Below are positions 25,347 to 54,930 of a stretch of 64,000 bases of DNA, in pieces. Positions within the stretch are counted from its first letter, which is position 1; the number at the start of each line of letters is the position of its first letter. The stretch is taken from positions 1-64,000 of IMG/VR virus record IMGVR_UViG_3300050120_000361, one strand, 5' to 3'. The notes beneath the pieces were generated by a model. It saw nothing but the letters and a program-made list of their open reading frames with translations. It made no database searches and was not told the origin of the DNA. A program made the position numbers and the translations under genes.

Positions 25347-26657
25347 TTATGGCCTGTTATTGTTATTGAAAAGAAGCATGAACCTGTCCAGACCTATCCT
25401 GCACCCGGCGGAGCCTTCGTGCCCGCCGCCGTTGTCGAGTCCCACATTTGAAGCGAGTTCGGCGCAGTTGATGTTCCCGCCTATGTCCCTGAACGACAGC
25501 TTGACGACCCTTTTGATGAAGTCTATCTTGTAGGACATGAGCACTTCGGAGGCGGGCATCCAGTCGTGCAAGTGCATACTCGCCATTCGGTCCGTGTCGG
25601 TCTTGAGCTCGCGTATGAACTGCGAGTTGTAGTGGTCCGCCTGGCCCTGACAAGTAACGCAGTGCACCGGATTTCCCTTTGGCCCGACGCCAGGAAGTAT
25701 CACCATGGTGTAGTCCTTGTTACGGGCGGCCTTCTGCTTGTCGCGCAGGTAGCGCCATCCGACGTTGGTTTTGTCAACCCAGTTGGGCTCCCACGCGCCG
25801 AGCACAGCCTCGTGGCTCTTCCACTTGATGTCCTTCCAATTGCCCGCGTTCCTGCCGAAGAAGCAGTCGTAAACGAACTGCATGTTGAAGTCCGAGCGCT
25901 CCAGCCCGTAGAACCACTCATTGAACGCCAAAGGGTCCATTGAGCGCTGCGCCCAGCTCTCATCTCTTTGGGCTGCGGGTATTGCCGACCATTCGGCGTA
26001 CCACCCCCAAGTGTCGAACCTGCTCACCATGTCCACTATTGGTTGGAAGTACTTCTGCGTGAGCCACCGGTCGAGCCCCTCGCGTATCGCGCTTCTCATC
26101 TTGCGCTTCGGCAGCAGGTTCCGTATGCGCCCTATCACGTTACCGTCCATGTTAAGCCGGTCTATGAGCGGGTCAATCCAGAACCTCATCTCGTAAAGGG
26201 AGTTGTGGTATATCTTGGCGCCGCTCTCGTCCGAACAGAACCACCACTTAACGTGGTCTGAAGGCCAGTCCTCGGTATCCTTCATCGCCTCCGTCATGTC
26301 CCCAATCAGCTGCTGCCACCCCTTGTAGACGAATGGGTGGTGGTCGAAAACCTCCACTACCGGGTGCCATGGGCCATTGTCCAGGCGTAACGTCTGTCCC
26401 TTCATTGAGAAGGTCTTTTCAATCCAATCAAGGGGCGGAGTAACGTCTATGAACTGGTAGTGGTCGTAGGGTTCGGCTATGATGTCAAGCCACTTGTCCT
26501 GTTTGGGGTCGGTGCCGTAGTTGTACCCGACGTGCTCCGCGTCGAAGTCCAATTCCTTGGACACTATCTCCAACGCCTTTTTTGCGATAGCGCCCGACAT
26601 CAGCCCGTCCATGTCCGCGCTGTGGTGCACCACGAGCATTCTGTATCTTCTGTTCAT
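25347..26657 (-). CDS. DHH-family phosphoesterase (DHH + DHHA1)
   Basis: HHSADMDG, FIDV, FDHH, SFR, GGGHEGSAG. Confidence 0.85.
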   Translation of the reverse strand: MNRRYRMLVVHHSADMDGLMSGAIAKKALEIVSKELDFDAEHVGYNYGTDPKQDKWLDIIAEPYDHYQFIDVTPPLDWIEKTFSMKGQTLRLDNGPWHPVVEVFDHHPFVYKGWQQLIGDMTEAMKDTEDWPSDHVKWWFCSDESGAKIYHNSLYEMRFWIDPLIDRLNMDGNVIGRIRNLLPKRKMRSAIREGLDRWLTQKYFQPIVDMVSRFDTWGWYAEWSAIPAAQRDESWAQRSMDPLAFNEWFYGLERSDFNMQFVYDCFFGRNAGNWKDIKWKSHEAVLGAWEPNWVDKTNVGWRYLRDKQKAARNKDYTMVILPGVGPKGNPVHCVTCQGQADHYNSQFIRELKTDTDRMASMHLHDWMPASEVLMSYKIDFIKRVVKLSFRDIGGNINCAELASNVGLDNGGGHEGSAGCRIGLDRFMLLFNNNNRP

Positions 26658-27756: not shown

Positions 27757-28116
27757 CTAATCTTGATTAGTCATTGCATCGAATTCGGTCTGAAGCCTGC
27801 CATTGTCGAATGCCTTGAATATGGGGCTTGTCTTCATGCGTTGAGCGTCCTTTTCGTCGTACTCGAAAACAACGAACGGTTCCTTTATGACTTCGGATAT
27901 TGGCGTATGTATGAACCAGTAGGCCGCTGTGATTTCCCACTTGCGCCTGGCCTTCGCCCTTGACTTCAGAGTGCCGCCGTACACCTCGCCCTTAATGGTG
28001 CAGGAGTGCCCGTGCTTCTTGGCGAACCAGAACACAGTTTCCTTCACGGTTCCTTTGGGCGGGTCGCCGATTTCGTGGGCAGGCTGTATAGGCCTCTGCG
28101 GGGTGTTGTATCTCAT
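27757..28116 (-). CDS. hypothetical protein
   Basis: 119 aa from ATG 28116 (ATGA coupling). Confidence 0.7.
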   Translation of the reverse strand: MRYNTPQRPIQPAHEIGDPPKGTVKETVFWFAKKHGHSCTIKGEVYGGTLKSRAKARRKWEITAAYWFIHTPISEVIKEPFVVFEYDEKDAQRMKTSPIFKAFDNGRLQTEFDAMTNQD

Positions 28117-28535
28117 AATATATGTTTTTTCCTTGATTTGGCGTAAGTCCTGAACATCCTGTATGTGGCAGAGCATCCGGCTATTATAATCGGCGAGCCT
28201 ATCGCGAAGTAGTGCCAATCCCTCAGGCCCATTACAACCGTAAGCCCCACGGCGAAGAACAGTCCGAAGAAAGCCACGAAAGACAGCCCAATCACTGCGC
28301 CCATGCCGAAGCCGAGAAGCCTCTCATTAGGAGCTGAAAGGTCGTTGAACCATTGGGGCCTGATTGAGTACACGAGACCGAATACGAAGCACGCGAGCAA
28401 GAGCATCCCAATAGGCATGAACTGGAACCTGCCCCTGGCTATTTGCGTCGCGCACACGACCGTCATTGGCGCAGAGGCCGCGAGTATCAGAAACGGCAGT
28501 ATTGTCCGCAGCTTGTCAAGTCTTGATTTCTTCAT
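28113..28535 (-). CDS. four-TM membrane protein
   Basis: 140 aa, four hydrophobic segments. Confidence 0.75.
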   Translation of the reverse strand: MKKSRLDKLRTILPFLILAASAPMTVVCATQIARGRFQFMPIGMLLLACFVFGLVYSIRPQWFNDLSAPNERLLGFGMGAVIGLSFVAFFGLFFAVGLTVVMGLRDWHYFAIGSPIIIAGCSATYRMFRTYAKSRKKHIL

Positions 28536-28619: not shown

Positions 28620-30698
28620 CTATTGTTCTACCAGTCCTACCACGGAAGTGTACCCGTTCTCCCACTCCCGCTGCTGGTCTGGGTGCTGGTACGGGTTGAA
28701 CGCTATCCCGTTCTGTCCGTCCTCAACACCCTTGTTGAATGCTATGTCCTTGTACCTCTGGCCGTTCTTCTCGCCTATCCCCCACCCCTGCAGCCATATA
28801 GAGTGCTTGAGCGGCTCCAAAACAACATTGAACGGGTTCTCGTCATCGGTTATGTAGCCCTCTATGCCGGCCTCTATGATCTTCTCCTTCTCGCCGGGCT
28901 CCATTATCAATAGCTCGTCCTTTGCCCTCTCCTCAGCCAGCTGCCAGCCGTCGGCCCACAGCTCGAACTCTTCGGTTGACTTCGCCCTGTCATACGGGTT
29001 CTCGTTCTTGTTGGCGAGAGACTGCACGTAGGCGGTGAAGCCCTCGCACTCAGGGGGCTGAAGGTCCGACAGGCCCATAGTCCTCCTGACGCCCTTTTTA
29101 GGCAGCGTGTCCTCGGCGCGCAGAAGGGAGCATTCGTATATGAAGCCCTGGTCCCATGCCGCGGATGGAGTAAGCAGCCCCTTGCCCAAATCGTCGGTAT
29201 TGCCGAAAGGGTTCTGGTCGAGCGAGCCTCCGTGCTGCTTCCATATCCTGCCGCCCTCGAAGTGCCAGTTCATCTTGTCCTGGTAGCGGGCGTTCCTGCA
29301 GAGCTCTGACTTTGACGCGAGCAGCCACCCCTCCTCCCAGGCCTTAGCGGCCTCGTCGCTCGTGTATGGGTTGTCATCCAAGTCCTTACCCTCCGAGTAG
29401 GCGCCGTGCCCGGTGTGGAAGGCGTTCTCCTGGAACTGCGTGCGGTTGCCGGACTCCTGCTTGGTGTATGCCGCCAGGAACTCGTTGTGCCTGTCTTCCC
29501 AGCCGCGCGTCCATATAGCTATCCGCTCATCCCCGTCCAATGGGCATTCTGTGAGCTGCATTCCTTCAGCGTACTGCCTGCGCCCCATCTCGTACAGTGA
29601 GCTTTCGATAGGCCTTTCGCGCTTGGACTCCGTTTCCCTGCACACCGCATCTGCGGACTTCCAGCCAAGGTCCCACTCGCCCACGAAGCCTATGGCCTTT
29701 ATGGTTTTCATGAAGTCCTTGGCGTAAACCGTGTTCTCTACGAGGTGCGGGTTCGAGCACCTGCGCATGTCGTTGAAGCGGGCCTCGTATCCTGCCTGGA
29801 ACTGCTCAGGCGCGTCCTTTTCGTACACTGGAACCTCGCCAATCACCTTCTTCTCCATTGAGTCGAAACGCTCGGATATGTCCTTGTCGAAAAGTGAACG
29901 CTTTCCCCACCCGGCATTCCACGACTGCCATACGAATGTGTCCAAATCGGACTTGAAAGGCTCGTCACCGACACCGAATGGATTATCCGCTTTTGTAAGC
30001 CCCCTGTCGTACGCCCTCTTGCCCATGTCCCCACAAATAGTGCCAATCTCCCCAGCGGTTTTGTCATTGATGGCGTTCCACATATTCCTAAGCTGTCTGA
30101 GGGTCTTTATCTCCGAATTCGAGAAGGTGAACTCGATGCTGTCGGCGTCAACAAGCCCGATAAGAGGCGTTGCCTTTTTGGACATGAACTCCTTTTCCAT
30201 GGCGGAATTGTTGGCCACGTGCCATCCGTCAGCCCAGTTGGTGGCTGCGTTGTCCTTGGCGTCCGGCGTAACTATCCACGGATTGTCGGTAAGCGCCTTG
30301 CCGGCAACGAACGCCCGCTGGCCCTCATTGTACTGGTTCCCATTGTCCCACCCGATCGACCACATCTTCTGCATCATGCCAGGCCCGAATGGGTTCTTGA
30401 ACTTGTCAATGCCCGTAATAACGGCATCCTTCCAGCCACGAGCCTTGGCCTCGGCGTACTTCTCCTCATTCGCGTTGCGAGGGTTCTCGATGTCAAGCAC
30501 CACCTGACGCTCAACCACATCCGGCTGTATGCTTCCAGCTATCTGGTTCAGAATGTCCTGCTTTGAGTGCTCCATTATGCCGAGTATCTCGTATGGAGTG
30601 AACCCGTCGTTGCGGCGCTTGATGCTCATTGCGCCCTCGCCGTCCTCAACGCTCATGGTGTACACGCGCTTTTTGCTGTCCTTGTTTTCTTTGTCCAT
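28620..30698 (-). CDS. protein with 10 RMF/CrpP-like repeats
   Basis: 10x G-x(8-12)-[NC]P[FYW]-x(7-25)-W-x2-G[WFY]. Confidence 0.75.
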   Translation of the reverse strand: MDKENKDSKKRVYTMSVEDGEGAMSIKRRNDGFTPYEILGIMEHSKQDILNQIAGSIQPDVVERQVVLDIENPRNANEEKYAEAKARGWKDAVITGIDKFKNPFGPGMMQKMWSIGWDNGNQYNEGQRAFVAGKALTDNPWIVTPDAKDNAATNWADGWHVANNSAMEKEFMSKKATPLIGLVDADSIEFTFSNSEIKTLRQLRNMWNAINDKTAGEIGTICGDMGKRAYDRGLTKADNPFGVGDEPFKSDLDTFVWQSWNAGWGKRSLFDKDISERFDSMEKKVIGEVPVYEKDAPEQFQAGYEARFNDMRRCSNPHLVENTVYAKDFMKTIKAIGFVGEWDLGWKSADAVCRETESKRERPIESSLYEMGRRQYAEGMQLTECPLDGDERIAIWTRGWEDRHNEFLAAYTKQESGNRTQFQENAFHTGHGAYSEGKDLDDNPYTSDEAAKAWEEGWLLASKSELCRNARYQDKMNWHFEGGRIWKQHGGSLDQNPFGNTDDLGKGLLTPSAAWDQGFIYECSLLRAEDTLPKKGVRRTMGLSDLQPPECEGFTAYVQSLANKNENPYDRAKSTEEFELWADGWQLAEERAKDELLIMEPGEKEKIIEAGIEGYITDDENPFNVVLEPLKHSIWLQGWGIGEKNGQRYKDIAFNKGVEDGQNGIAFNPYQHPDQQREWENGYTSVVGLVEQ

Positions 30699-30724: not shown

Positions 30725-31255
30725 TTACTTTATCTCTGGAATGTTCACGACCTGCAGAACCTCTGTTCCCATGCGGTGGAGAAACGCACGCGGTGAGTAG
30801 TACCCTATGTCGAATTTGGTCTCATGCTTCTCGATGAACAGGAGCCGGTGTATGCCGACATGGGCAGTCATCTTTGAGCACTGCAGGCACGGCGCGTATG
30901 ACACGTACATTGTCATGTTGTCCAAGTTGCCCCTGTTCTGCATCTTCATGTAGTGAATGGCGGCCTGCTCCTCGGCGTGTATAACGTAGGGTATCGAAAG
31001 CTGGTCGTCCACGTCGTCCTCGCACCTCTGCACGCCCAGGCTGTCGAACATTTTATTGTACCCTATCGACAGCATGACGCCGGTCTTGTGGTCGCCTATT
31101 ATGGCGCCAACCTTCTTCTTGACGGCGGGCGAGAGCATGCGTATCGCGTTCAGCTGCGTTACGAGAAGCTGCTCCTTTACGGTCAGTTTCAAATAGTCTA
31201 TCCTTTTTGTGTCTATGAAGTACTTCTCTCTGTCGAAGCTGAGCTCTTCCGCCAT
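30725..31255 (-). CDS. dCMP deaminase-family protein
   Basis: KVGAII, SIGYN, HAEE, PCLQC; start 31255 after promoter. Confidence 0.85.
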   Translation of the reverse strand: MAEELSFDREKYFIDTKRIDYLKLTVKEQLLVTQLNAIRMLSPAVKKKVGAIIGDHKTGVMLSIGYNKMFDSLGVQRCEDDVDDQLSIPYVIHAEEQAAIHYMKMQNRGNLDNMTMYVSYAPCLQCSKMTAHVGIHRLLFIEKHETKFDIGYYSPRAFLHRMGTEVLQVVNIPEIK

Positions 31256-31284
31256 GTTCAATCGTGTTTTTTGTTGTAAATGAA

Positions 31285-31311
31285 ATATCCCGCAGACCAT
31301 GTAGTTATAGG
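31285..31311 (-). promoter_or_regulatory. phage promoter-like motif overlapped by an inverted repeat
   Basis: CCTATAA-N13-GGGATAT; CCCGCAGACC/GGTCTGCGGG arms. Confidence 0.75.
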
Positions 31312-31353
31312 TCTGCGGGACAGTTTCGGCCCTAAAGTTGCTAACGCCGGGCG

Positions 31354-31737
31354 CTACTTGGCGTTTATCAGCGCCAAAATGTACTTCTGCTTCTGCGCGG
31401 TATCGGCCCTCAAAAGCTTTATCTCGTGCAGCAGAGGCTCCTTGCCGGACTGTTTCAATATCCTGCGGAGTTCCATGTTCTCGCGCTTCAGGCCCGCAAC
31501 CACGACGGAGCGCAGCACGTATGTAGGAAAGAATACCGTGTCCCTGCCGTAGAACACTATGGAAACCTTGCTTGAAGTGTCTCCTCCAGAAATCTCCTGC
31601 TTGTAGGCGTAGTCGATAACCGATTGTGTCAATTGTCGCTGACAGTTCCAGCGCTCGTACCACCCTGTCAGCAGGATGAGGGTTACGGTCCATGCCATTA
31701 CGACTATTTTCTGCTGTTTGTTGAGGTTCAGTTTCAT
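31354..31737 (-). CDS. membrane-anchored protein
   Basis: 127 aa, N-terminal TM. Confidence 0.7.
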   Translation of the reverse strand: MKLNLNKQQKIVVMAWTVTLILLTGWYERWNCQRQLTQSVIDYAYKQEISGGDTSSKVSIVFYGRDTVFFPTYVLRSVVVAGLKRENMELRRILKQSGKEPLLHEIKLLRADTAQKQKYILALINAK

Positions 31738-32150
31738 GGCTGTGTTTGGTTTGATGGGTTTGCCTGGCTTTCAAGCGAAGACAGTTGCGGAAGTATGTCG
31801 TTGAGGCACTCCCTCAACAGGCTCATTAGCTCGTACATTTTCAAGTTGGCCGGCGAATGGTCACTGTACTGGTACACCTTGAACATCTGCTCCTCAAGGT
31901 TTTTCTGGTATTCGGCCAACTGCTCGTGACTGAACTTCTGGTGCAGGAACCTGAGGTCGTCGTGGTGCAGCTGCAGCAGGGACATGTCGCTGCCATCCAA
32001 TTTGGGCGTGAAAGTGGCGAACATGTTCCAGGCGTCCCCGTTCACTGCAACGGCCTGACACAGTATCCCCTTGTCCCGCCTCTCGTCACCGAGCACCTCG
32101 AGTAGGCCGTCTATGGTGTGGAACGGCTCCGTCCTATCAGTCCTTGGCAT
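31734..32150 (-). CDS. hypothetical protein
   Basis: 138 aa. Confidence 0.7.
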   Translation of the reverse strand: MPRTDRTEPFHTIDGLLEVLGDERRDKGILCQAVAVNGDAWNMFATFTPKLDGSDMSLLQLHHDDLRFLHQKFSHEQLAEYQKNLEEQMFKVYQYSDHSPANLKMYELMSLLRECLNDILPQLSSLESQANPSNQTQP

Positions 32151-41738: not shown

Positions 41739-44700
41739 TCAGTTTATGTCTATGTACATGGAACCCTTTTCTGAGGGGATTACTTGAAACGCATGAGTCT
41801 CGAACATCTGCTCGAGGTTGTGGTCTATTACAAAGAGGTTCTTGGACTCAAAGCGGTTCAGAAGCGTTATGAACATCTCCTGATAATTCACTATATTCTC
41901 CTTTTTAGAGAGTTCTTTGCCGCTGTTGAGCTGACCCGAGAGCTCGTCTATGAATATGCATGAAACACTGTTCTTGACATTCAGGGTGGATATGGCGTAT
42001 ATTAGCGCAAGTCCCTGGAATGCTGTTTCCATGCCTGATACGAGCTGAACCGGCCTGAATACGGCGTGGCCGTCTTTCATCTCCACCATGTAAAGCTCGC
42101 CGCTCTCGTCCCAGAACAGTTTGAAGCTGAGCCCCTCAAGCAGCAGGTTGAGCGTGTTGTTCAAAAAGCTCCTGTAGTAGTTGAACACTATGTCCTTAAA
42201 GTCCCGCTTGATGAGCTTCTCGTATATCGCAAAAACCATGGACTTGCGCTGCCACTCCACGTACTCTCTGATGAGCTTCTCATTGGACTCTATCTTGAGT
42301 TCGTGCCTTTGGAGCGCGAGGCTGTGCTGCGCCCGTTGCGTGTTCATGACCGACATTGACTCGTTTTCGTCTCGCTCATTCCTTTCTTGCTCGTCAAGCC
42401 CGGCCACCGCCTCATCCCACATAGGCTCCTTAAGCCTCAGGTTTTCAAGAGTGGATGCCTCCAAAGCGTGTGTCTGCTTCAGCTGGTCAATGCTACGGTT
42501 GTGCTCATCGACAGTGAGGTTGTGCCGGCGCACGGCGTCCAAGGCTTCGTTGTGCGTCTTTAGCCTGTCGCCGTATGACTTCAAATCCTTTGAGTACTTT
42601 TCCGTGGCTTCGGTTGCCGCCCTGACTATTTTCTCAATGCCCTGGTACAGCAGGGCCATCTTGTCTGATGAGTCCTTTGCGCCTTTGGTCCACATATCCA
42701 ATTTGGCCTTGGCACCGGCCTGCTCATCGAACACCAGCAGTGTGGCGTCCTTTCGCAGGGTCACCTCCCGAAGCGCGGCGAGCTTGGTAAGCCTTGCGGT
42801 AATCACGTCCAATTCGATGTACAGGTTCTCATCGGCGCTGTAGTCCTTCTTCTGCTCCTTAGCGGCTTCGGCCGTTGTTTTGAGCCTGTTCCACTTGTCC
42901 CTTGCAGTCACGGTCGCGACAGCCAATGGGCGTATCGCGTCATTGTAGGACGCGTGCTCAGCAAGCACTGTATTCCAGTCGCTTTCAGCCGAGGCCACGC
43001 TTGCAAGTATTCCGTAGGTGTCGACATGCGTCTTCGCCGCTGCGGCGAGGCTTTGCTGCTTTTCCAGTTCAGGAGTGATTTGCGTCAACTCTATCACTAT
43101 CGCCTCATTGTCGTCCTTTAGCCGCTGCTTGAGAACCTCCCAATGCCCGGCATCCCCTGATATTGGTTTATTGCAGGTGGGGCATATGCCCGACTCGAGC
43201 TGATTTTTGTTGGAAGACAGCCTGTCGCTGAGCGCTTTCTGCCTGTCCTTGATTTCCTGGACCTTCTCATTGAATGTCTTTTCCTTGGCCTGCAGGACTT
43301 CGTGCGTTTCCCTCACCGCATCGAGGTAAGCGCCACCTGCGGTGTCAAGCTCTATTTTTGCGGTTGCCGCTGCATTGGCGTAGTCCTGTTCGATGCGCCA
43401 GTACTCCTTTGTAACCTCCTCCCAGCCTCCGTCAATTTCCGCTTGTGTCTGCTTCTCGAGGATGTCCCACATGGCGGCTATGTCATCAGCGTATGCTTCA
43501 TTTACCGTCTTCAGCGCGCCTATTTCATCAGCAAGTATTTCAATCTCTTCCTTATCAGCTTCTTTGGTGTCAGGCTCAATTGGCTCGGTTTCAGTGAATA
43601 TCGGCTCTTCCCGCTTTTCCCTGCTTTCGAATGAGTCCACGGCCGCCTTGGCGTTATCCACCTTGACCTGCTGCTCCTTAATGAGCGTTGGCACGTTGCC
43701 CAATTCGAGCTTTTTCTGGTGGCCCTCGGCTATTGCCCGCCTTATGTGATTGAGCCTGTTTTCTGTGAATGCCTTGGAGTCGTCGAGCAGCTCAATTTTG
43801 TTCTGGGCGGCGTTCCTGTCGGCAATCGCCATTATTATCTCCTCCTTGAGCTGGGTCATGTTCACCTTTGGCTTAACGAGGTCGTAGTATGACTTGACCG
43901 ACGCGAGGTTGCCTTCAAGCACCTGCAGGTAGTCTACGCCTATGTAGTTCAGGACCATTTGGGTCAGCTCCGCGGGCGGCATGTTCAGCATCGACAGTAT
44001 CTTCGCCTGGTTCAGTATCATTATGGTATTCGGAACCTCACCGAACCATCTGTCCAATAGCTGCTGGGCCTCGTCGCCTATCTTCTCCACTGGCTCCGCG
44101 CCCTCCTTGTGAACCTGAAGCTTCAGGTTCCGCGTCACGCCGCTCACGTACTGCTTCCAATTCAGGGAGCGCTTCATCTCGTCTGTGGTGTTCTGCTTCC
44201 ACGCGCGCTGCGCCCAGCGTATCGCGTGCACCTTTGTGCCGTTTGCGCGGAATATGAGCCTTACCATTATGGTGTCAATCTCCGGAAGCTTGTCGTTGAA
44301 CAGGTGCAGTGAGTTCTGAACCTTCTTGGCCTTCGGCATGCCCTCCATTATCTCGTCCTTCAGCACCCACCGCAGCATATTGTACATGGTGGTCTTGCCT
44401 ATTCCATTGGTGCCGGTTATGCGTGTCAGTCCTGGTATGTTCAGCTTTATCTTGTTTTTGCCGAGGGCCATGAAGCAGTTGCACTCGATGCTCTCGAGCT
44501 CGTTCACGTAGTTTGAGGTCTTGGTCAATGAGTTCGAGAGTTGCTCAGAGAACAATTGCCTTATCTCGGCCAGTATCTCATTGACGTCCTCCTCCTCAAC
44601 GAACTCCTTCTCAATCGTTTTCTTGTGTCCTTCGAGCACCTTGACGAACAGTGCGTGCAGCTTGGCCTCATCGAGTACCATCTCATCCATGGTTTCTTCA

Positions 44701-45827
44701 GGCTCTTCACCCTCTCCTTCCGTAACGGCCTCAGTAGGTTGGACTTCGCTTTGGTTCATTACGAACTTGTCGTACTGGCAGTTAACTGAAACGGTTCCCA
44801 TCCGCTGCGAGCCGAGCTCGTGCGTCACGCGTATCAGTTCGAGCTCGTGCTTTGAGTAGGTGCTCGAGAGCTTGAACTTTATGAACGTGTTGCACGTTCC
44901 CCAAACGCTGTCGAGCCTGAGCACCGCGAGAACCTGCTGCAGCCAGTTCTCAGAAACCGATGAGGTAGTCATGTCGAACGTCACGTAGCTTATCAGGTTT
45001 GTAAGCGGCTCATCCCTTACGGTCCATGAGCCGTTCTCGATGTCTATTATCTTGACTACCTTTTGGTCGCCTACCGCCAGTCCGGGCTTGTTGCGGACCT
45101 TGGCGAATGTGCCCTCGGAGTGGTCGCGCTGTATAGGCGAGCCTGGATATATGAAGGTTTTGGACTTGTCGATGCTCTGGACCGTCCAGTTCACGTGAAT
45201 GTCCCCTGCGAGGGTAAGCGTGGAGAGGAAGTCCTCAACGGACGCGAGCCTCTCGTACCTGTCCTTCTTTACCGGAAGCTTTGTGGCGTCAACGTACTCC
45301 CGCAGAATGTCGTGGTACACGCATATGTTGAAGGTGTAGGGGTCTATGCCTTCCGCCTTGATGTTAGCCCCGTTTGACGGCCCGTCCTCCAAAGAGTAGG
45401 AAATCCATCCGAGCCCTTCAACCCGTGACCTGTAGTACCGCTGCTCCTTCAGGTAGGTCACCTTCTTGCTGAGCTCGGGCTCAAGCTTGTCTATGAACGA
45501 CTTGAACGTGTCAACGGCGTTGTGCCCCTTCTCGGCCTCAAGCGCCTTCCGCATGTCGTGAAGGTCGTGGTTGCCGTTCATTACGCAAATCTCAACCAGG
45601 GTGGGTATCGCAAGGCATTCTGACAGGTGGTTGTATATCGCCTTCTTCTCAGCGTCATTCGAGGCCGCATACTCCGTAAGGTCGCCGGCCAGCAGGTATA
45701 CCTCAACGCCCTCGCGAACGATAATGTCCCGTATCTCCGCAAGCACAGAGGCGTACGGCTTGGTCAGGTCCCGCTCGCGCAGCTTGACCTGGATGTCTGC
45801 TGTGTGCAGTATTCTTGTTTTCAGCAT
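41739..45827 (-). CDS. fused SbcD/Mre11 nuclease - SbcC/Rad50 ATPase (gp47-gp46-like)
   Basis: HTADIQ, AGDL, GNHD, AGDIH; GTNGIGKTT, coiled coil with CPTC hook, VSGME signature, FIDE Walker B. Confidence 0.9.
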   Translation of the reverse strand: MLKTRILHTADIQVKLRERDLTKPYASVLAEIRDIIVREGVEVYLLAGDLTEYAASNDAEKKAIYNHLSECLAIPTLVEICVMNGNHDLHDMRKALEAEKGHNAVDTFKSFIDKLEPELSKKVTYLKEQRYYRSRVEGLGWISYSLEDGPSNGANIKAEGIDPYTFNICVYHDILREYVDATKLPVKKDRYERLASVEDFLSTLTLAGDIHVNWTVQSIDKSKTFIYPGSPIQRDHSEGTFAKVRNKPGLAVGDQKVVKIIDIENGSWTVRDEPLTNLISYVTFDMTTSSVSENWLQQVLAVLRLDSVWGTCNTFIKFKLSSTYSKHELELIRVTHELGSQRMGTVSVNCQYDKFVMNQSEVQPTEAVTEGEGEEPEETMDEMVLDEAKLHALFVKVLEGHKKTIEKEFVEEEDVNEILAEIRQLFSEQLSNSLTKTSNYVNELESIECNCFMALGKNKIKLNIPGLTRITGTNGIGKTTMYNMLRWVLKDEIMEGMPKAKKVQNSLHLFNDKLPEIDTIMVRLIFRANGTKVHAIRWAQRAWKQNTTDEMKRSLNWKQYVSGVTRNLKLQVHKEGAEPVEKIGDEAQQLLDRWFGEVPNTIMILNQAKILSMLNMPPAELTQMVLNYIGVDYLQVLEGNLASVKSYYDLVKPKVNMTQLKEEIIMAIADRNAAQNKIELLDDSKAFTENRLNHIRRAIAEGHQKKLELGNVPTLIKEQQVKVDNAKAAVDSFESREKREEPIFTETEPIEPDTKEADKEEIEILADEIGALKTVNEAYADDIAAMWDILEKQTQAEIDGGWEEVTKEYWRIEQDYANAAATAKIELDTAGGAYLDAVRETHEVLQAKEKTFNEKVQEIKDRQKALSDRLSSNKNQLESGICPTCNKPISGDAGHWEVLKQRLKDDNEAIVIELTQITPELEKQQSLAAAAKTHVDTYGILASVASAESDWNTVLAEHASYNDAIRPLAVATVTARDKWNRLKTTAEAAKEQKKDYSADENLYIELDVITARLTKLAALREVTLRKDATLLVFDEQAGAKAKLDMWTKGAKDSSDKMALLYQGIEKIVRAATEATEKYSKDLKSYGDRLKTHNEALDAVRRHNLTVDEHNRSIDQLKQTHALEASTLENLRLKEPMWDEAVAGLDEQERNERDENESMSVMNTQRAQHSLALQRHELKIESNEKLIREYVEWQRKSMVFAIYEKLIKRDFKDIVFNYYRSFLNNTLNLLLEGLSFKLFWDESGELYMVEMKDGHAVFRPVQLVSGMETAFQGLALIYAISTLNVKNSVSCIFIDELSGQLNSGKELSKKENIVNYQEMFITLLNRFESKNLFVIDHNLEQMFETHAFQVIPSEKGSMYIDIN

Positions 45828-51983: not shown

Positions 51984-53600
51984 TTAATCCTCGATCGCTT
52001 TCCAGTAGGATTTGCGCTTGCCGAGCGTTAGCCTGTTCTGACGCTCAAGACCTGTGGACATTATCAGCTTGGGGTCGTTGGTCATTAGGTTGGTGAAGCG
52101 CATGCCCTCCTCGTTGTTCAGCTTGTTCGGGTTGAGCGTGCCTGAAACAACCACGTCTATTATGTCGTTCTTTGATATTTCGTGCGCAGCTATCACGTCG
52201 AACATGTGCGTTATTACCGGAACGCAGTAGTTGGAGTAGTGCTTCACCAGCGATGCCCGGCCAATATCCTCAATGGCCCAGATGTCCTTCTCCACGCCGA
52301 AGACGCAGTACCCGCGCTCTATCAGGTAACGTGCCGCATTGGCCTTTCCGAGAACCTTCTCAACGGTGCGTATCACGCGGTTGTCAGTCATGAAGTCCTC
52401 GACAATCCTCACGTTCGCGAAGTGCCCTTTGAAGCTCACCCTGGTGAGCGTGCCGTAATCGTTCATGCGCCGGATGCACACTATGTCCCTGTAGGTCGTG
52501 TCGAGCATTGTGGTCAGAAGCGATTTGAGCACGTTCCTGTCGTACTCGTACTGCGAAGGGACCTTCCAGCGGGCCCAGTCTATTTGCGCCCTTATGGATG
52601 GCACCAGGTGCTCCTCGGCTATGAAGCACTCGTGGCTGTTGGCGAGGTAGTCCTTTCCTATCACGCCGTTTGTGGAGTGCACCCGTATCGTGAACTTTGA
52701 GGTGTATATGTAGAACTCGCGCGGGAACACGTATATGGAGTACTGACCCCTGTCGCCGTTGAACATCTGCACCAGGCACTTGTCAAGGGCCTCGTACAGC
52801 CGGTTCTTCATTGCCTCGGTCTCCTTCCACCAGGCGTGCAAGGTGTCGAGCTGCTGCTCCGATATGGCCACGGATGTCTTGGTGAATTTGGCGCAGGCCT
52901 GCGCGAGCTTCCTGTTTGATGTCGTGTCGGAAACCCATGTGGCCCTGAAGCCGAATGTGCCGCAGCGAAGCGCTGAGTATTCCATGAACTTGGCGAAAGC
53001 GGGCAGCTTGTAGAGTATGGGCCATGCGGACTGTAACAGTGACATGCCGTTCTTCGGCTTTGTCATCCTGCCAACAACCCCGCTTCCCCAGCCGTAACCC
53101 AGCTCAAATGGGGTGCTCTGCGGGCCGCTCATGGCGGCGCACCATATCCTGGTCGGTGTCATCTCCAGTTCCCAAACAACCTTATCGAGCCCCTTATTCA
53201 CCAGCGCCTCTTCCACGCGCACGTAGTGCAGGAACACCATGGTGCAGTACGCCATTATGCGGTCGTACTGGCGCAGGTTGCACATGAGCATGTTCTCGAA
53301 CGTGGCGTAGAGCTCCCGAAGGTCGCCTCTCACGTAGGCGTCCTTTTCCGCATCGGTTATTGTCGCGTTTATGAAGGGCTTTACCCGGAGATAGTCCGTG
53401 TCTTCAAACAGTAGTGGATTGTTCGTTATTAGCGATGACCACCTCCAGTCAAAGCCCTCTACCTTGTCGAAGTTGCTGGCGATGAAGTCGCCTACGTTCT
53501 TTACGTATTTCGTGTTTTCGAGGCTTGAGGACTCGAAAATAGAGCGCATGCTGATGACCTTTTCGCGGTCGGTCAGCAAGGCCTCCTTCTCATTTGACAT
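51984..53600 (-). CDS. hypothetical protein
   Basis: about 538 aa, no motif recognised. Confidence 0.8.
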   Translation of the reverse strand: MSNEKEALLTDREKVISMRSIFESSSLENTKYVKNVGDFIASNFDKVEGFDWRWSSLITNNPLLFEDTDYLRVKPFINATITDAEKDAYVRGDLRELYATFENMLMCNLRQYDRIMAYCTMVFLHYVRVEEALVNKGLDKVVWELEMTPTRIWCAAMSGPQSTPFELGYGWGSGVVGRMTKPKNGMSLLQSAWPILYKLPAFAKFMEYSALRCGTFGFRATWVSDTTSNRKLAQACAKFTKTSVAISEQQLDTLHAWWKETEAMKNRLYEALDKCLVQMFNGDRGQYSIYVFPREFYIYTSKFTIRVHSTNGVIGKDYLANSHECFIAEEHLVPSIRAQIDWARWKVPSQYEYDRNVLKSLLTTMLDTTYRDIVCIRRMNDYGTLTRVSFKGHFANVRIVEDFMTDNRVIRTVEKVLGKANAARYLIERGYCVFGVEKDIWAIEDIGRASLVKHYSNYCVPVITHMFDVIAAHEISKNDIIDVVVSGTLNPNKLNNEEGMRFTNLMTNDPKLIMSTGLERQNRLTLGKRKSYWKAIED

Positions 53601-54930
53601 CAATTCCCTCCACGCTTCTTGGGTTCACCTGTATGCCACTACGCGTCATCACCTCATCCATTGCGGCGGTCTGGTCGTCCCTGTTGTCCATGCAGATGTT
53701 CTGCACGTCGGACATTGAGATGCCCGCAGGGAAGGCCTGCTCGCTGAAGTACTGCTGCAGGTACTCCTCATTGCGCCCGTTTCCGTAGAACAGTGCGAAG
53801 TACTTCTCGATTGTCCTTTCGTCGGGGTTCTTGACGGTCAGGTGGTAGTCCATCCTGCCCGCCCGTATCAGTGCCGGGTCGAGCTCGGACTTGCGGTTCG
53901 TCGTGAATATTACAATCATGCCTGGCTTGTGCATGGCGCCCGATATGCTGTTGAGTACAGCCGAAAAGGACAGTTCGGACTTCTTGTTCCTTATCTCCCT
54001 GCCATTAAAGAACGTGTCGATGTCCTCCACCAGGAGTATCGCGTTTTCGCCTATGTTCTTCACTGCCATCTTCAAAGACATGTTGCCGTTCAGTTCGTTA
54101 AAGTCTATGGTGTACACGTCCCTGTTAAGGTGCGAGGCGAGCGCCAATGCCAATGTGGTTTTACCGTTTCCTGGGTCTCCGTCGAATATGTAGCCGCGCG
54201 TGTATGGTATGCCCATTCTCTCATACCAATCCCTGTCGCCCGCAAACCTCTGCATGTCAGCGAGCAGGTCGGTGACCGTGTCGTCGGTCATCACCACCTT
54301 GTCGAGAGGCTTCACGTCTATCTTGTTGGCGAGGTAGTACCATCCGCCGTAGTCGGCAGCGTACACGCGCACCGAGTTGGGGTTCTGCTTCTTGTTGGTT
54401 GCCTCAACTATTGTTTCCAGAAGCTCGTTTATCTCCTTCTTGGCTCGGACGCCTATTATCGTGTACTCGTTGAAGAACATGCTGAGCACACTGTTGGTGT
54501 TCGTGAGCCTTTCCTTGTTCTTGAAGATATAGACCCGCTTGCCGTTAAGGCGTATCACGAACTTGCCCTGGTTCTGCCTGTAGAACACCCTCCGCGCCTT
54601 CTCCACCTCCTTGCCGCTGTCACCCTCCTTGGGCAGCGCGGACTTGTCAACATGGTTTCCGAAAGCCTCGTACTCCTGGGTCGTCGCCACCACGTTGCGG
54701 TACTTTACGGAGTGGTTGGCGTAGAACCAGTTCTCAAAGTCGAAGTACAGCGGGTCGGTCTGGTTGATGTTGACCCGGTACATTACCAGGCCCTCGACCT
54801 TCCAGTAAATGGCCTGCGGGACAGTCCTCAAATAGTACAGTATGGAACCCATCGAGCCAGCGAGCGCGGCCGCGGAAAAGAACTGATTGGTCTCAAGCTG
54901 GTGCCTGACCCATAGCCATATTTCATGCAC
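53590..54930 (-). CDS. BCS1-like AAA+ ATPase
   Basis: N-terminal TM; GIPYTRG...GDPGNGKT, VEDID, TTN, LDPALIRAGRMD. Confidence 0.85.
   Translation of the reverse strand: MHEIWLWVRHQLETNQFFSAAALAGSMGSILYYLRTVPQAIYWKVEGLVMYRVNINQTDPLYFDFENWFYANHSVKYRNVVATTQEYEAFGNHVDKSALPKEGDSGKEVEKARRVFYRQNQGKFVIRLNGKRVYIFKNKERLTNTNSVLSMFFNEYTIIGVRAKKEINELLETIVEATNKKQNPNSVRVYAADYGGWYYLANKIDVKPLDKVVMTDDTVTDLLADMQRFAGDRDWYERMGIPYTRGYIFDGDPGNGKTTLALALASHLNRDVYTIDFNELNGNMSLKMAVKNIGENAILLVEDIDTFFNGREIRNKKSELSFSAVLNSISGAMHKPGMIVIFTTNRKSELDPALIRAGRMDYHLTVKNPDERTIEKYFALFYGNGRNEEYLQQYFSEQAFPAGISMSDVQNICMDNRDDQTAAMDEVMTRSGIQVNPRSVEGIDVK

What the first reader, a model, noticed from the sequence alone, without database searches (positions are those of the whole stretch)
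28620..30698. 692-aa protein made of ten RMF/CrpP-like repeats
Seen: ten units of G-x3-(aromatic)-x2-G-x(4-6)-[NC]P[FYW]...W-x2-G[WFY], e.g. YEMGRRQYAEGMQLTECPLDGDERIAIWTRGW, FHTGHGAYSEGKDLDDNPYTSDEAAKAWEEGW and FNKGVEDGQNGIAFNPYQHPDQQREWENGY. Established: E. coli ribosome modulation factor is a single 55-aa domain (RGYQAGIAGRSKEMCPY...WLGGW) that binds the 30S subunit and promotes 100S hibernation; the small CrpP proteins share this pattern. Here the units are acidic rather than basic. Inference: a multivalent polymer of this fold that could sequester ribosomes, titrate hibernation or defence factors, or scaffold another partner. I do not know of a described ten-repeat form.
Basis: partly seen in the sequence, partly recalled or inferred. 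Interest (0 to 1): 0.76.

Follow-up and report, generated by a model that had tools for sequence, protein, structure and literature searches.

The report
Jumbo-phage protein with ten RMF-fold repeats
A 208-kb phage from peat encodes a 692-residue acidic protein made of a small unannotated N-terminal domain plus ten diverged copies of the ribosome-modulation-factor fold; the copies keep the fold's core but not the residues RMF uses to grip ribosomal RNA, so it is more likely a protein-binding scaffold than a hibernation factor.

Summary
Window 28620-30698 (-) is one 692-aa ORF with ten units G-x3-aromatic-x2-G-x(4-6)-[NC]P[FYW]...W-x2-G-[WFY]. Pfam RMF scores 80.7 bits. A profile of the units finds only RMF in the PDB. 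Among 48,161 solved chains, the best structural match to the AlphaFold model is E. coli RMF (Z 7.7, 2.1 A, 52 of 53 residues, unit 6).

The units keep RMF's structural core. At the four rRNA-contact positions (R3, K5, R11, R45) they are basic only at chance level, and most units are net acidic. They share only about 23% identity with each other, so they are not ten equal binding sites.

It occurs alone in most of the 259 representative hits, in clusters that are mostly viral, and matches nothing in Pfam, PHROGs or the PDB.

The gene holds one fixed position, after dCMP deaminase, in five related ~200-kb phage lineages. Unit number varies from about 6 to 10, and it is the fastest-diverging gene of its block. 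Leader sequences lack Shine-Dalgarno motifs, and the RMF family was not found in 151 sampled Bacteroidota genomes.

Most likely it is a cytoplasmic modular adaptor that engages host or phage proteins. A ribosome role is unsupported but not excluded.

The parts
28620..30698 (-). Whole ORF, 692 aa (= P0001). No signal peptide or hydrophobic N-terminus by eye, pI 4.9.
30465..30698 (-). N-terminal domain, aa 1-78: beta-hairpin (12-20, 23-31) plus a long helix (35-54). Motif Y-x-I/V...R-x-NDGF-x3-E-L-L-G...Q-x2-G-x-I-x-PD. A separate, unannotated and mostly viral domain family.
30339..30455 (-). RMF-fold unit 1 (aa 82-120), conserved in all five family members.
30213..30344 (-). RMF-fold unit 2 (aa 119-162). 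Its first helix is continuous with the second helix of unit 1.
30045..30212 (-). Non-RMF insert (aa 163-218) with a small predicted beta element and the conserved motif FTFSNSE. Shared with P0002 only.
29898..30044 (-). RMF-fold unit 3 (aa 219-267), long loop. No Pfam hit on its own, but beats 500 of 500 shuffles in the leave-one-out test.
29652..29813 (-). RMF-fold unit 4 (aa 296-349), 23-residue loop, conserved in all five family members.
29490..29606 (-). RMF-fold unit 5 (aa 365-403). The only unit with C-P, as in true RMF. Present only in this phage, with no ortholog in the four relatives.
29316..29432 (-). RMF-fold unit 6 (aa 423-461). Best RMF match: 31.4 bits alone, and superposes on solved E. 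coli RMF at Z 7.7, rmsd 2.1 A.
29133..29273 (-). RMF-fold unit 7 (aa 476-522), 16-residue loop. The weakest unit: no Pfam hit alone, and 3 of 500 shuffles reach its leave-one-out score.
28935..29060 (-). RMF-fold unit 8 (aa 547-588). Absent from P0005.
28773..28898 (-). RMF-fold unit 9 (aa 601-642), conserved in all five family members.
28641..28757 (-). RMF-fold unit 10 (aa 648-686). The most conserved unit: 17 invariant residues across the five proteins, several of them polar or charged.
30725..31250 (-). Upstream dCMP deaminase, 26 nt from this gene's ATG and its neighbour in every relative. The listed 349-aa ORF is over-extended; orthologs are 169-202 aa. The upper coordinate given here is approximate.

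Best explanation
The gene encodes a probably cytoplasmic, non-enzymatic modular adaptor of a jumbo phage. It has a small N-terminal beta-hairpin/helix domain followed by a chain of ten helix-loop-helix hairpins that descend from the RMF/CrpP fold.

Shown:
- The units are homologous to RMF and keep its structural core (the two Gly, the N/C-Pro turn and the Trp...Gly-aromatic pair).
- Unit 6 is predicted to superpose on solved RMF.
- The rRNA-contact arginines and lysines of RMF are not kept, and the surface charge is reversed.
- The units are old and individually specialised: about 23% identity to each other, against 40-79% to their positional orthologs.
- The ends (N-domain plus unit 1, unit 4, units 9-10) are conserved, while the middle gains and loses units.
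- The gene is the fastest-diverging member of a conserved replication and nucleotide-metabolism block.

Inferred:
- The RMF hairpin has been re-used here as a protein-protein interaction module, not as an rRNA clamp.
- The conserved ends hold one or more constant partners. The N-domain may add self-association.
- The variable, fast-evolving middle tracks changing partners, most plausibly host proteins during takeover or counter-defence.
- It is not an RMF-type hibernation factor.
For: Homology and fold:
- Pfam RMF 80.7 bits; Rmf_CrpP_fam 37.3 bits.
- A profile of the units finds only the three RMF sequences in the PDB.
- RMF chain 4v8g_AV is rank 1 of 48,161 solved chains (Z 7.7, rmsd 2.1 A, 52 of 53 residues).
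- The ESM model of unit 6 matches clusters carrying PF04957 at TM 0.81-0.91.
- The AF2 model has pLDDT 81.8 and a helix-loop-helix at each unit.

Loss of RNA-binding features:
- Positions equivalent to R3, K5, R11 and R45 are basic in 7, 10, 7 and 6 of 42 units, about the K+R background (residue roles from PMC8126665).
- pI is 4.9-5.4 in all five orthologs.

The fold is used off the ribosome:
- An Acidobacteriota protein combines a lipoprotein signal, an RMF-like unit and an OmpA domain.
- Atlas clusters show the domain fused to RND transporters and GapR-like proteins.

Specialised units: identity matrix; no DNA-level repeats.

Conserved position and fast evolution:
- Synteny in L003, L004, L005 and two further contigs.
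- 49% identity against 93% for the neighbouring deaminase; 28% against 35-73% for the rest of the block.
- Unit gain and loss across the five proteins.

Host context:
- No Shine-Dalgarno enrichment upstream of genes, but A-rich leaders.
- PF04957 found in 0 of 151 sampled Bacteroidota genomes.

The N-domain is an independent, mostly viral module.
Against: - No partner has been identified, and nothing here measures binding.
- The global arrangement of the units is not predicted with confidence (pTM 0.34).
- Fold similarity to solved RMF was shown for one unit only, on a predicted model, at a Z that the tool itself calls middling for helical proteins.
- The fixed-offset mapping of R3, K5 and R11 is approximate for units with indels in their first helix.
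- The host is inferred only from leader composition and distant phage relatives.
- Fast divergence is also compatible with relaxed constraint on a mere spacer.
- The N-domain dimer prediction gave no answer.
- No RNA run was listed, so expression is not shown.
Confidence: 0.45

Rival explanations
1. Ribosome-directed factor. Some or all units dock on the small subunit at or near the RMF site, or bind ribosomal proteins. The array would tether or silence host ribosomes, or block host hibernation factors, to the phage's benefit.
For: True homology and fold similarity to RMF. One N-domain relative is fused to a KOW motif, which is common in ribosomal and NusG-type proteins. The ESM model of the N-domain has a weak shape resemblance to SUI1 (TM 0.40).
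Against: The rRNA-contact residues are not conserved and the charge is reversed. The units differ from each other, so they are not a multivalent copy of one site. RMF's target includes the anti-SD, yet this phage's genes show no SD use. The RMF family was not found in 151 sampled Bacteroidota genomes. The fold also occurs in an exported lipoprotein. The KOW and SUI1 hints are single or sub-threshold.
Confidence: 0.15
2. Acidic decoy. The charge-reversed RMF hairpins imitate a negatively charged surface (nucleic-acid-like) and soak up basic nucleic-acid-binding proteins, such as host defence nucleases, nucleoid proteins or free ribosomal proteins.
For: Net charge is -34, and the later units carry -3 to -7 each. 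The gene evolves fast, as counter-defence genes tend to. It lies among early or middle-type replication genes.
Against: A pI of 4.9 is only moderately acidic. By my recollection, known DNA mimics such as Ocr and ArdA are more extreme. Units 1-4 are neutral or slightly basic. No periodic acidic pattern was demonstrated, and no similarity to known mimics was found in the PDB or BFVD.
Confidence: 0.15
3. Internal organiser of the phage's own replication and nucleotide-metabolism machinery. The array would bring together dCMP deaminase, thymidylate synthase, ligase, the DHH phosphoesterase and similar enzymes, in the manner of the T4 dNTP-synthetase complex.
For: The gene is always immediately downstream of dCMP deaminase (26-nt gap) and inside a conserved block with ligase, DHH-like protein, ThyA, helicases and SbcCD. 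Individually distinct units would suit several different clients.
Against: Its presumed clients are far better conserved than it is (93% against 49%). A scaffold for conserved enzymes would be expected to co-evolve slowly. Unit number varies while the neighbouring gene set does not.
Confidence: 0.15
4. Virion-internal or ejected protein that is packaged and released into the cell envelope on infection.
For: The top, non-significant BFVD shape matches are internal virion proteins. RMF-like units occur in envelope lipoproteins. A GH108 lysozyme lies 2 kb upstream.
Against: All those structural matches have E > 0.02 and TM of about 0.1. The gene sits in a replication block, not among structural genes. 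It has no hydrophobic or signal sequence.
Confidence: 0.05

Closest known systems
Ribosome modulation factor (RMF; Pfam PF04957; E. coli RMF, PDB 4V8G/6H4N; Vibrio 2JRM)
   Same: The same two-helix hairpin with the same core signature (G...G...[C/N]P-aromatic...W-x2-G-W). The match is significant in both directions. Unit 6 superposes on solved RMF at 2.1 A over 52 residues.
   Different: RMF is a single ~55-aa basic protein, described as highly conserved among Gammaproteobacteria (PMC8126665). Its R3, K5, R11 and R45 contact 16S rRNA (PMC8126665). Here there are ten tandem, acidic, mutually diverged units in a 692-aa phage protein, those positions are not kept, and the NCBIfam equivalog cut-off is not reached (28.8 against 40 bits).
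Rmf/CrpP family small proteins (NCBIfam NF041886): CrpP on Pseudomonas ICEs and plasmids, and single 'RMF domain superfamily' proteins in phages such as Agrobacterium phage Milano
   Same: RMF-like domain carried by mobile elements. The HMM is passed at 37.3 bits against a cut-off of 28. Function is unsettled in both cases.
   Different: Those are stand-alone single domains. This protein is a ten-unit array fused to a further N-terminal domain. No tandem form was found in the literature or in GenBank phages.
Acidobacteriota Pal/OmpA-like lipoproteins with an N-terminal RMF-like unit (e.g. L130:1408-2121)
   Same: An 'NPY'-type RMF-like unit used as a module inside a larger, non-ribosomal protein.
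   Different: One unit only, exported, and fused to a peptidoglycan-binding OmpA domain. Bacterial, not viral.
Alpha-helical repeat scaffolds (Sel1-like, TPR, ARM/HEAT)
   Same: Tandem helix-turn-helix units of about 40 aa that typically serve as protein-binding platforms (my own knowledge). These are the kinds of structures Foldseek ranks first for the whole model.
   Different: No sequence match to any such Pfam family at E <= 1. The structural matches are not significant (E > 0.07, TM ~0.1). A regular solenoid packing is not predicted (pTM 0.34).

Membership tests
Ribosome modulation factor sensu stricto (RMF) | Matches the Pfam RMF model (PF04957) above the gathering score | tested here: met
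   80.7 bits against a cut-off of 27.9, 4 stretches. Unit 6 alone scores 31.4 bits.
Ribosome modulation factor sensu stricto (RMF) | Reaches the NCBIfam equivalog model PRK14563 (NF011162) cut-off | tested here: not met
   28.8 bits against a cut-off of 40.
Ribosome modulation factor sensu stricto (RMF) | Two-helix hairpin fold superposable on solved RMF | tested here: met
   Unit 6 of the AF2 model against 4v8g_AV: Z 7.7, rmsd 2.1 A, 52 of 53 residues, rank 1 of 48,161 chains. The other nine units show the same helix-loop-helix pattern but were not superposed individually.
Ribosome modulation factor sensu stricto (RMF) | Structural core residues G16, G23, C29-P30, W40, G43, W44 | tested here: met
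   [N/C]-P 10 of 10, W40 10 of 10, G43 10 of 10, aromatic at position 44 10 of 10. G16 and G23 each 6 of 10 by fixed offsets, the rest being shifted by one-residue indels.
Ribosome modulation factor sensu stricto (RMF) | Basic rRNA-contact residues R3, K5, R11 (helix 28) and R45 (anti-SD C1536), required for ribosome binding and dimerisation (PMC8126665) | tested here: not met
   Basic in 2, 2, 1 and 1 of the 10 units here, and in 7, 10, 7 and 6 of 42 units across the family. That is the K+R background level.
Ribosome modulation factor sensu stricto (RMF) | Single-domain protein of about 55 aa, strongly basic | tested here: not met
   692 aa, ten units plus an extra domain, pI 4.9, net charge -34.
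Ribosome modulation factor sensu stricto (RMF) | Binds the 30S subunit and promotes 100S dimers | not testable with these tools
   Needs sucrose-gradient or cryo-EM experiments.
Ribosome modulation factor sensu stricto (RMF) | Chromosomal gene of Gammaproteobacteria | tested here: not met
   Encoded by a 208.5-kb virus record. Leaders lack SD motifs. PF04957 was found in 0 of 151 sampled Bacteroidota genomes and, among the 14 control genomes, only in E. coli.
Rmf/CrpP family (NCBIfam NF041886, subfamily model) | Matches the family HMM above its cut-off | tested here: met
   37.3 bits against a cut-off of 28.
Rmf/CrpP family (NCBIfam NF041886, subfamily model) | Small stand-alone single-domain protein | tested here: not met
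   Ten tandem units plus the N-domain.
TPR / Sel1-like helical repeat proteins | Sequence match to a TPR or SEL1 family model, or a significant structural match | tested here: not met
   Pfam at E <= 1 returns only RMF. Foldseek against Sel1 protein 6ok3_A gives E 0.34 and TM 0.10.

The most novel reading that the evidence does not exclude
The array is a phage translation modulator of a new type. Charge-reversed RMF hairpins, anchored by the N-domain, would dock on ribosomal proteins around the mRNA-exit/RMF site, or capture free basic ribosomal proteins or hibernation factors. The phage would thereby reprogram or protect ribosomes in a host that does not use Shine-Dalgarno pairing. It would be the first poly-RMF factor, and the first link between the widespread mobile-element RMF/CrpP-like proteins and a defined ribosomal function.
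Probability: 0.12. Interest if true: 0.85.

Novelty: new variant of a known kind. Interest (0 to 1): 0.52.

Why it matters
RMF-like and CrpP-like mini-proteins are common on phages, ICEs and plasmids, yet their function is unsettled. CrpP was described as a ciprofloxacin-modifying enzyme, and later surveys found that crpP-like genes do not always go with resistance.

This protein shows the fold being used as a repeat module. It is multiplied ten times, it lacks RMF's RNA-binding residues, and each copy has specialised. Together with the exported OmpA fusion, this argues that 'RMF domain' annotations on mobile elements should not be read as 'ribosome hibernation'.

The work also brings to light an unannotated ~70-aa N-terminal domain family. 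It accounts for most of the 259 representative hits, its clusters are mostly viral, and it has no match in Pfam, PHROGs or the PDB. That makes it a candidate for small-protein host-takeover studies.

If the array did act on ribosomes, it would be a new kind of phage translation control.

Tried and rejected
- Whole-protein phmmer against the PDB: no hit. The RMF link only appears with a profile of the units.
- PHROGs for the protein, its relatives and the N-domain: nothing useful.
- tblastn of the whole protein, the N-domain and a three-unit piece against 50,697 GenBank phages: no match.
- IMG/VR scan with the two-sequence profile: no relatives.
- Word-seeded search with a three-unit piece: no hits.
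- Degenerate-pattern scan of bacterial genomes for the N-domain motif: 120 loci, of which only 2 are real by HMM, both stand-alone copies in MAG contigs (L063 from a Verrucomicrobia MAG). No host signal.
- N-domain homodimer prediction: 0.36 against a mark of 0.42, 'no answer'. Not used as evidence.
- Fold searches of the N-domain model in the PDB and AFDB clusters: no significant match.
- Foldseek of the 692-aa model against the PDB and BFVD, and the Atlas shape search: only non-significant generic helical proteins. Only the Foldseek-independent VIA-align scan recovered RMF.
- Paralogs of either module elsewhere in the 208.5-kb genome: none.
- DNA-level repeats in the gene: none, so recent duplication is rejected.
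- RNA runs: none was listed.
- Promoter and terminator scan around the gene: no excess over shuffles worth interpreting.
- Literature searches for tandem or phage RMF-like proteins and for a CrpP structure: nothing relevant beyond phage Milano's two single-domain proteins.
Full report
**1. The observation**

Window 28620-30698 (minus strand) is a single ATG-initiated ORF of 692 aa. A motif scan finds ten [NC]P[FYWLH] cores, each followed 8-23 residues later by W-x2-G-[WFY]. This gives units at aa 82-120, 119-162, 219-267, 296-349, 365-403, 423-461, 476-522, 547-588, 601-642 and 648-686.

The resemblance to RMF is statistically real:
- Pfam RMF (PF04957) scores 80.7 bits (E 8e-23, four stretches).
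- NCBIfam's Rmf/CrpP family model scores 37.3 bits against a cut-off of 28. The stricter RMF equivalog model stays below its cut-off, at 28.8 against 40 bits.
- Scanned individually, six units hit Pfam RMF at E < 0.05, and unit 6 passes the gathering score alone.
- The four units that do not hit alone (3, 7, 8, 9) still belong. When each unit is scored against a profile of the other nine, every unit beats at least 98.8% of 500 shuffles of its own composition, and seven beat all of them.
- The match is reciprocal. A profile of the 19 units from this protein and its closest homolog retrieves exactly three PDB sequences at E <= 10, all of them RMF (6h4n_v, 4v8g_AV, 2jrm_A; E about 1e-3).

There is no repetition at the DNA level.

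**2. Fold**

AlphaFold2, run on an alignment of 122 sequences, gives mean pLDDT 81.8 but pTM 0.34. The local structure is therefore confident and the overall arrangement is not. After the N-terminal domain the protein is all-helical. Each unit is helix, then a loop carrying the NP-aromatic turn, then helix. In several places the second helix of one unit runs into the first helix of the next (for example 108-131 and 448-488).

Foldseek searches with the whole model return only non-significant generic helical repeat proteins. A Foldseek-independent scan of 48,161 solved chains ranks E. coli RMF on the ribosome (4v8g_AV) first: Z 7.7, rmsd 2.1 A, 52 of 53 residues, against model residues 417-469, which is unit 6. 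The tool warns that Z below about 8 can be a common arrangement for helical proteins. The weight of this result comes from its being rank 1, covering the whole RMF chain, and agreeing with the sequence evidence.

Independently, the ESM Atlas model of the same stretch matches cluster representatives carrying PF04957 at TM 0.81-0.91 normalised by the query.

**3.

An exhaustive profile search of 1.84 billion representative proteins found 259 hits at E <= 0.001. Only four are long relatives: P0002 (653 aa), P0003 (636 aa), P0004 (522 aa) and P0005 (472 aa). Among the 150 best hits listed, all the others match only the first ~75 positions of the profile.

Residues 1-78 are thus a separate domain. 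It usually occurs alone in proteins of 53-100 aa (median 77 aa). It also occurs:
- duplicated in tandem (P0006);
- fused to one RMF-like unit (P0014);
- fused to a KOW motif (P0012);
- fused to DUF4406 (P0054);
- fused to unannotated sequence.

The Atlas clusters nearest to it are 94-100% viral. The contigs examined are arrays of small, same-strand ORFs without Pfam hits.

The domain has no consistent match in Pfam, PHROGs or the PDB by sequence. Its AF2 model (pLDDT 83.7) is a beta-hairpin at 12-20/23-31 plus one long helix at 35-54. That model has no significant structural neighbour in the PDB or the AlphaFold DB clusters. A homodimer prediction fell below the tool's mark and is not evidence either way.

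**4. Genomic and evolutionary setting**

The window is the first 64 kb of a 208,538-bp virus record with direct terminal repeats, estimated complete. It is seen in three peat metagenome runs.

Genes nearby are:
- an NAD-dependent ligase;
- a dCMP deaminase, whose stop codon lies 26 nt upstream of this gene's ATG;
- a GH108 lysozyme;
- thymidylate synthase;
- helicases;
- a fused SbcD-SbcC-like protein;
- a BCS1-like AAA ATPase.

The ligase's nearest isolated relatives are the ~220-kb phages Sphingomonas PAU, Chryseobacterium MA9V and Tenacibaculum pT24, at about 25-27% identity.

Every long relative lies in the same gene order: GH108, small genes, dCMP deaminase, this gene, two small genes, a ~343-aa gene, a ~418-aa gene, then ligase. 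This holds on contigs of up to 196.5 kb. The gene is therefore a positional ortholog in a clade of jumbo phages.

It is the most diverged gene of that block:
- Against L003 it is 49% identical, while the adjacent deaminase is 93% identical.
- Against L005 it is 28% identical, against 35-73% for twelve neighbours.

The five-protein alignment shows that the N-domain and units 1, 4, 9 and 10 are conserved. Unit 10 has 17 invariant residues, many of them polar. Units 2, 3 and 5-8 are gained, lost or unalignable. Unit 5 is unique to this phage, P0003 has an extra unit after the N-domain, and P0005 lacks unit 8.

Within the protein the units share on average 23% identity (maximum 41%). With their positional counterparts in P0002 they share 40-79%. 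The array is therefore old, each unit has its own identity, and there is no concerted evolution. Neither module has a paralog elsewhere in the genome.

**5. Does it work like RMF?**

Mutagenesis and structures of E. coli RMF (PMC8126665, read) separate two classes of residue:
- Structural: G16, G23, G43, C29, P30, W40, W44.
- Functional: R3, K5 and R11 (ribosome binding; R3 and K5 contact helix 28 of 16S rRNA) and R45 (contacts C1536 of the anti-SD and is needed for dimerisation).

In the ten units the structural set is kept. The [N/C]-P pair, W40, G43 and an aromatic at position 44 are present in 10 of 10 units, and the two Gly are in register in 6 of 10 and otherwise shifted by one residue. 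The functional set is not kept. The R45 position reads D, H, G, K, E, L, I, Q, G, T. Across 42 units in the family, the four positions are basic in 7, 10, 7 and 6 cases, about what a 12% K+R composition gives. The aligned RMF core (aa 13-44) carries net +3, while the units carry +2 to -7.

Three further observations weaken a ribosome reading:
- Upstream of 217 ORFs of this phage, GGAG occurs in 6.0%, against 5.8% in random genomic windows. TAAA and AAAA occur in 27-28%, against about 3.5%. This leader style without Shine-Dalgarno motifs is, to my knowledge, typical of Bacteroidota. It fits the distant Chryseobacterium and Tenacibaculum phage relatives.
- PF04957 was found in 0 of 151 sampled Bacteroidota genomes, in 9 of 151 Acidobacteriota, in 10 of 151 genomes of the class containing Aeromonas, and only in E. 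coli among 14 control genomes.
- The Acidobacteriota hits are proteins of about 240-295 aa. In the one examined, a lipoprotein signal peptide and lipobox are followed by one RMF-like 'NPY' unit (30.9 bits) and an OmpA domain (70.3 bits). The fold is therefore used outside the cytoplasm. The Atlas also lists it fused to RND transporters and GapR-like viral proteins.

**6. Most likely mechanism**

Shown: an RMF-derived helical hairpin has been multiplied and diversified. Its RNA-binding residues are gone. Its ends are conserved and its middle is plastic. It evolves faster than its neighbours.

Inferred: the protein is a cytoplasmic adaptor that offers a series of different protein-binding surfaces. 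The N-domain plus unit 1, and units 9-10, would hold constant partners. The centre would adapt to variable ones, most plausibly host proteins during takeover or counter-defence. I put this at about 0.45.

Rivals:
- a ribosome-directed factor (0.15);
- an acidic decoy for basic nucleic-acid-binding proteins (0.15);
- an organiser of the phage's own nucleotide and replication enzymes (0.15);
- a packaged internal protein (0.05).

That it is not a canonical RMF-type hibernation factor I hold at about 0.8.

**7. Comparison and novelty**

It belongs to the RMF/CrpP superfamily by sequence and fold. It fails the defining functional features of RMF proper: the equivalog score, the basic contact residues, and the single small basic domain.

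Single RMF-like proteins are known on phages (Milano) and on ICEs (CrpP). A ten-unit tandem array joined to a further domain was not found in the literature searches, in GenBank phages, or beyond five lineages in the 1.84-billion-representative search. It is a new variant of a known kind: a new architecture and probably a new use of a known fold, with function still unproven.

**8. Limits**

- No binding data exist.
- Only one unit was superposed on solved RMF, and on a predicted model.
- The host is inferred, not known.
- Expression is not shown; no RNA run was listed.
- The family is tiny and known only from metagenomes.

Noticed in passing
window 30465-30698 (-); relatives P0006-P0151: The ~70-aa N-terminal domain (beta-hairpin plus helix, motif R-x-NDGF-x3-ELLG...Q-x2-G-x-I-x-PD) is a large, mostly viral family. 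It accounts for most of the 259 representative hits and has no Pfam, PHROG or PDB match. It occurs alone, in tandem (P0006), or fused to KOW (P0012), DUF4406 (P0054) and unknown domains.
   Followed up: partly
L130:1408-2121 (+), Acidobacteriota genome G282: A 237-aa protein with a lipoprotein signal and lipobox (LGSLAC), one RMF-like unit (Pfam RMF 30.9 bits) and an OmpA/Pal-like domain (70.3 bits). An RMF-fold module in an exported protein. Similar ORFs occur in 6 of 151 sampled Acidobacteriota genomes.
   Followed up: partly
whole genome G000 (217 ORFs): Gene leaders show no Shine-Dalgarno enrichment (GGAG 6.0% against 5.8% background) but strong A-rich tracts (TAAA/AAAA 27-28% against about 3.5%, peaking at -14 to -11). 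This suggests a Bacteroidota-like host for this peat jumbo phage.
   Followed up: partly
window 25347-26657 (-): A 436-aa protein with clear DHH/DHHA1 motifs by eye (HHSADMDG, FDHHPF, GGGHEGSAG) but no Pfam hit at E < 0.01. Probably a very divergent NrnA/RecJ-like phosphoesterase. It is conserved in the syntenic block (40-42% identity to its counterparts in L004 and L005).
   Followed up: no
window 30725-31774 (-): The listed 349-aa TTG-initiated ORF over-extends the dCMP deaminase. Orthologs are 169-202 aa, and the deaminase domain lies at aa 210-313 of the listed ORF. The true start is probably an internal ATG (MAEELSFDREKYF...).
   Followed up: partly
window 41739-45827 (-): A 1362-aa protein combining a calcineurin-like phosphoesterase N-terminus (SbcD/Mre11-like) with an SMC_N/AAA_23 region (SbcC/Rad50-like). 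It appears to be a single-chain fusion of the two subunits.
   Followed up: no
window 53590-54930 (-): A 446-aa AAA ATPase with a BCS1 N-terminal domain and a BCS1-type lid. This architecture is best known from the mitochondrial chaperone BCS1 and is unusual to see in a phage replication region.
   Followed up: no
window 28113-28535 (-): The ORF just downstream is hydrophobic (several predicted membrane helices by eye). Only about 30 aa align with the 71-aa protein at the same position in L004, so the listed 140-aa ORF may be over-extended or may overlap the next gene (27757-28218).
   Followed up: no
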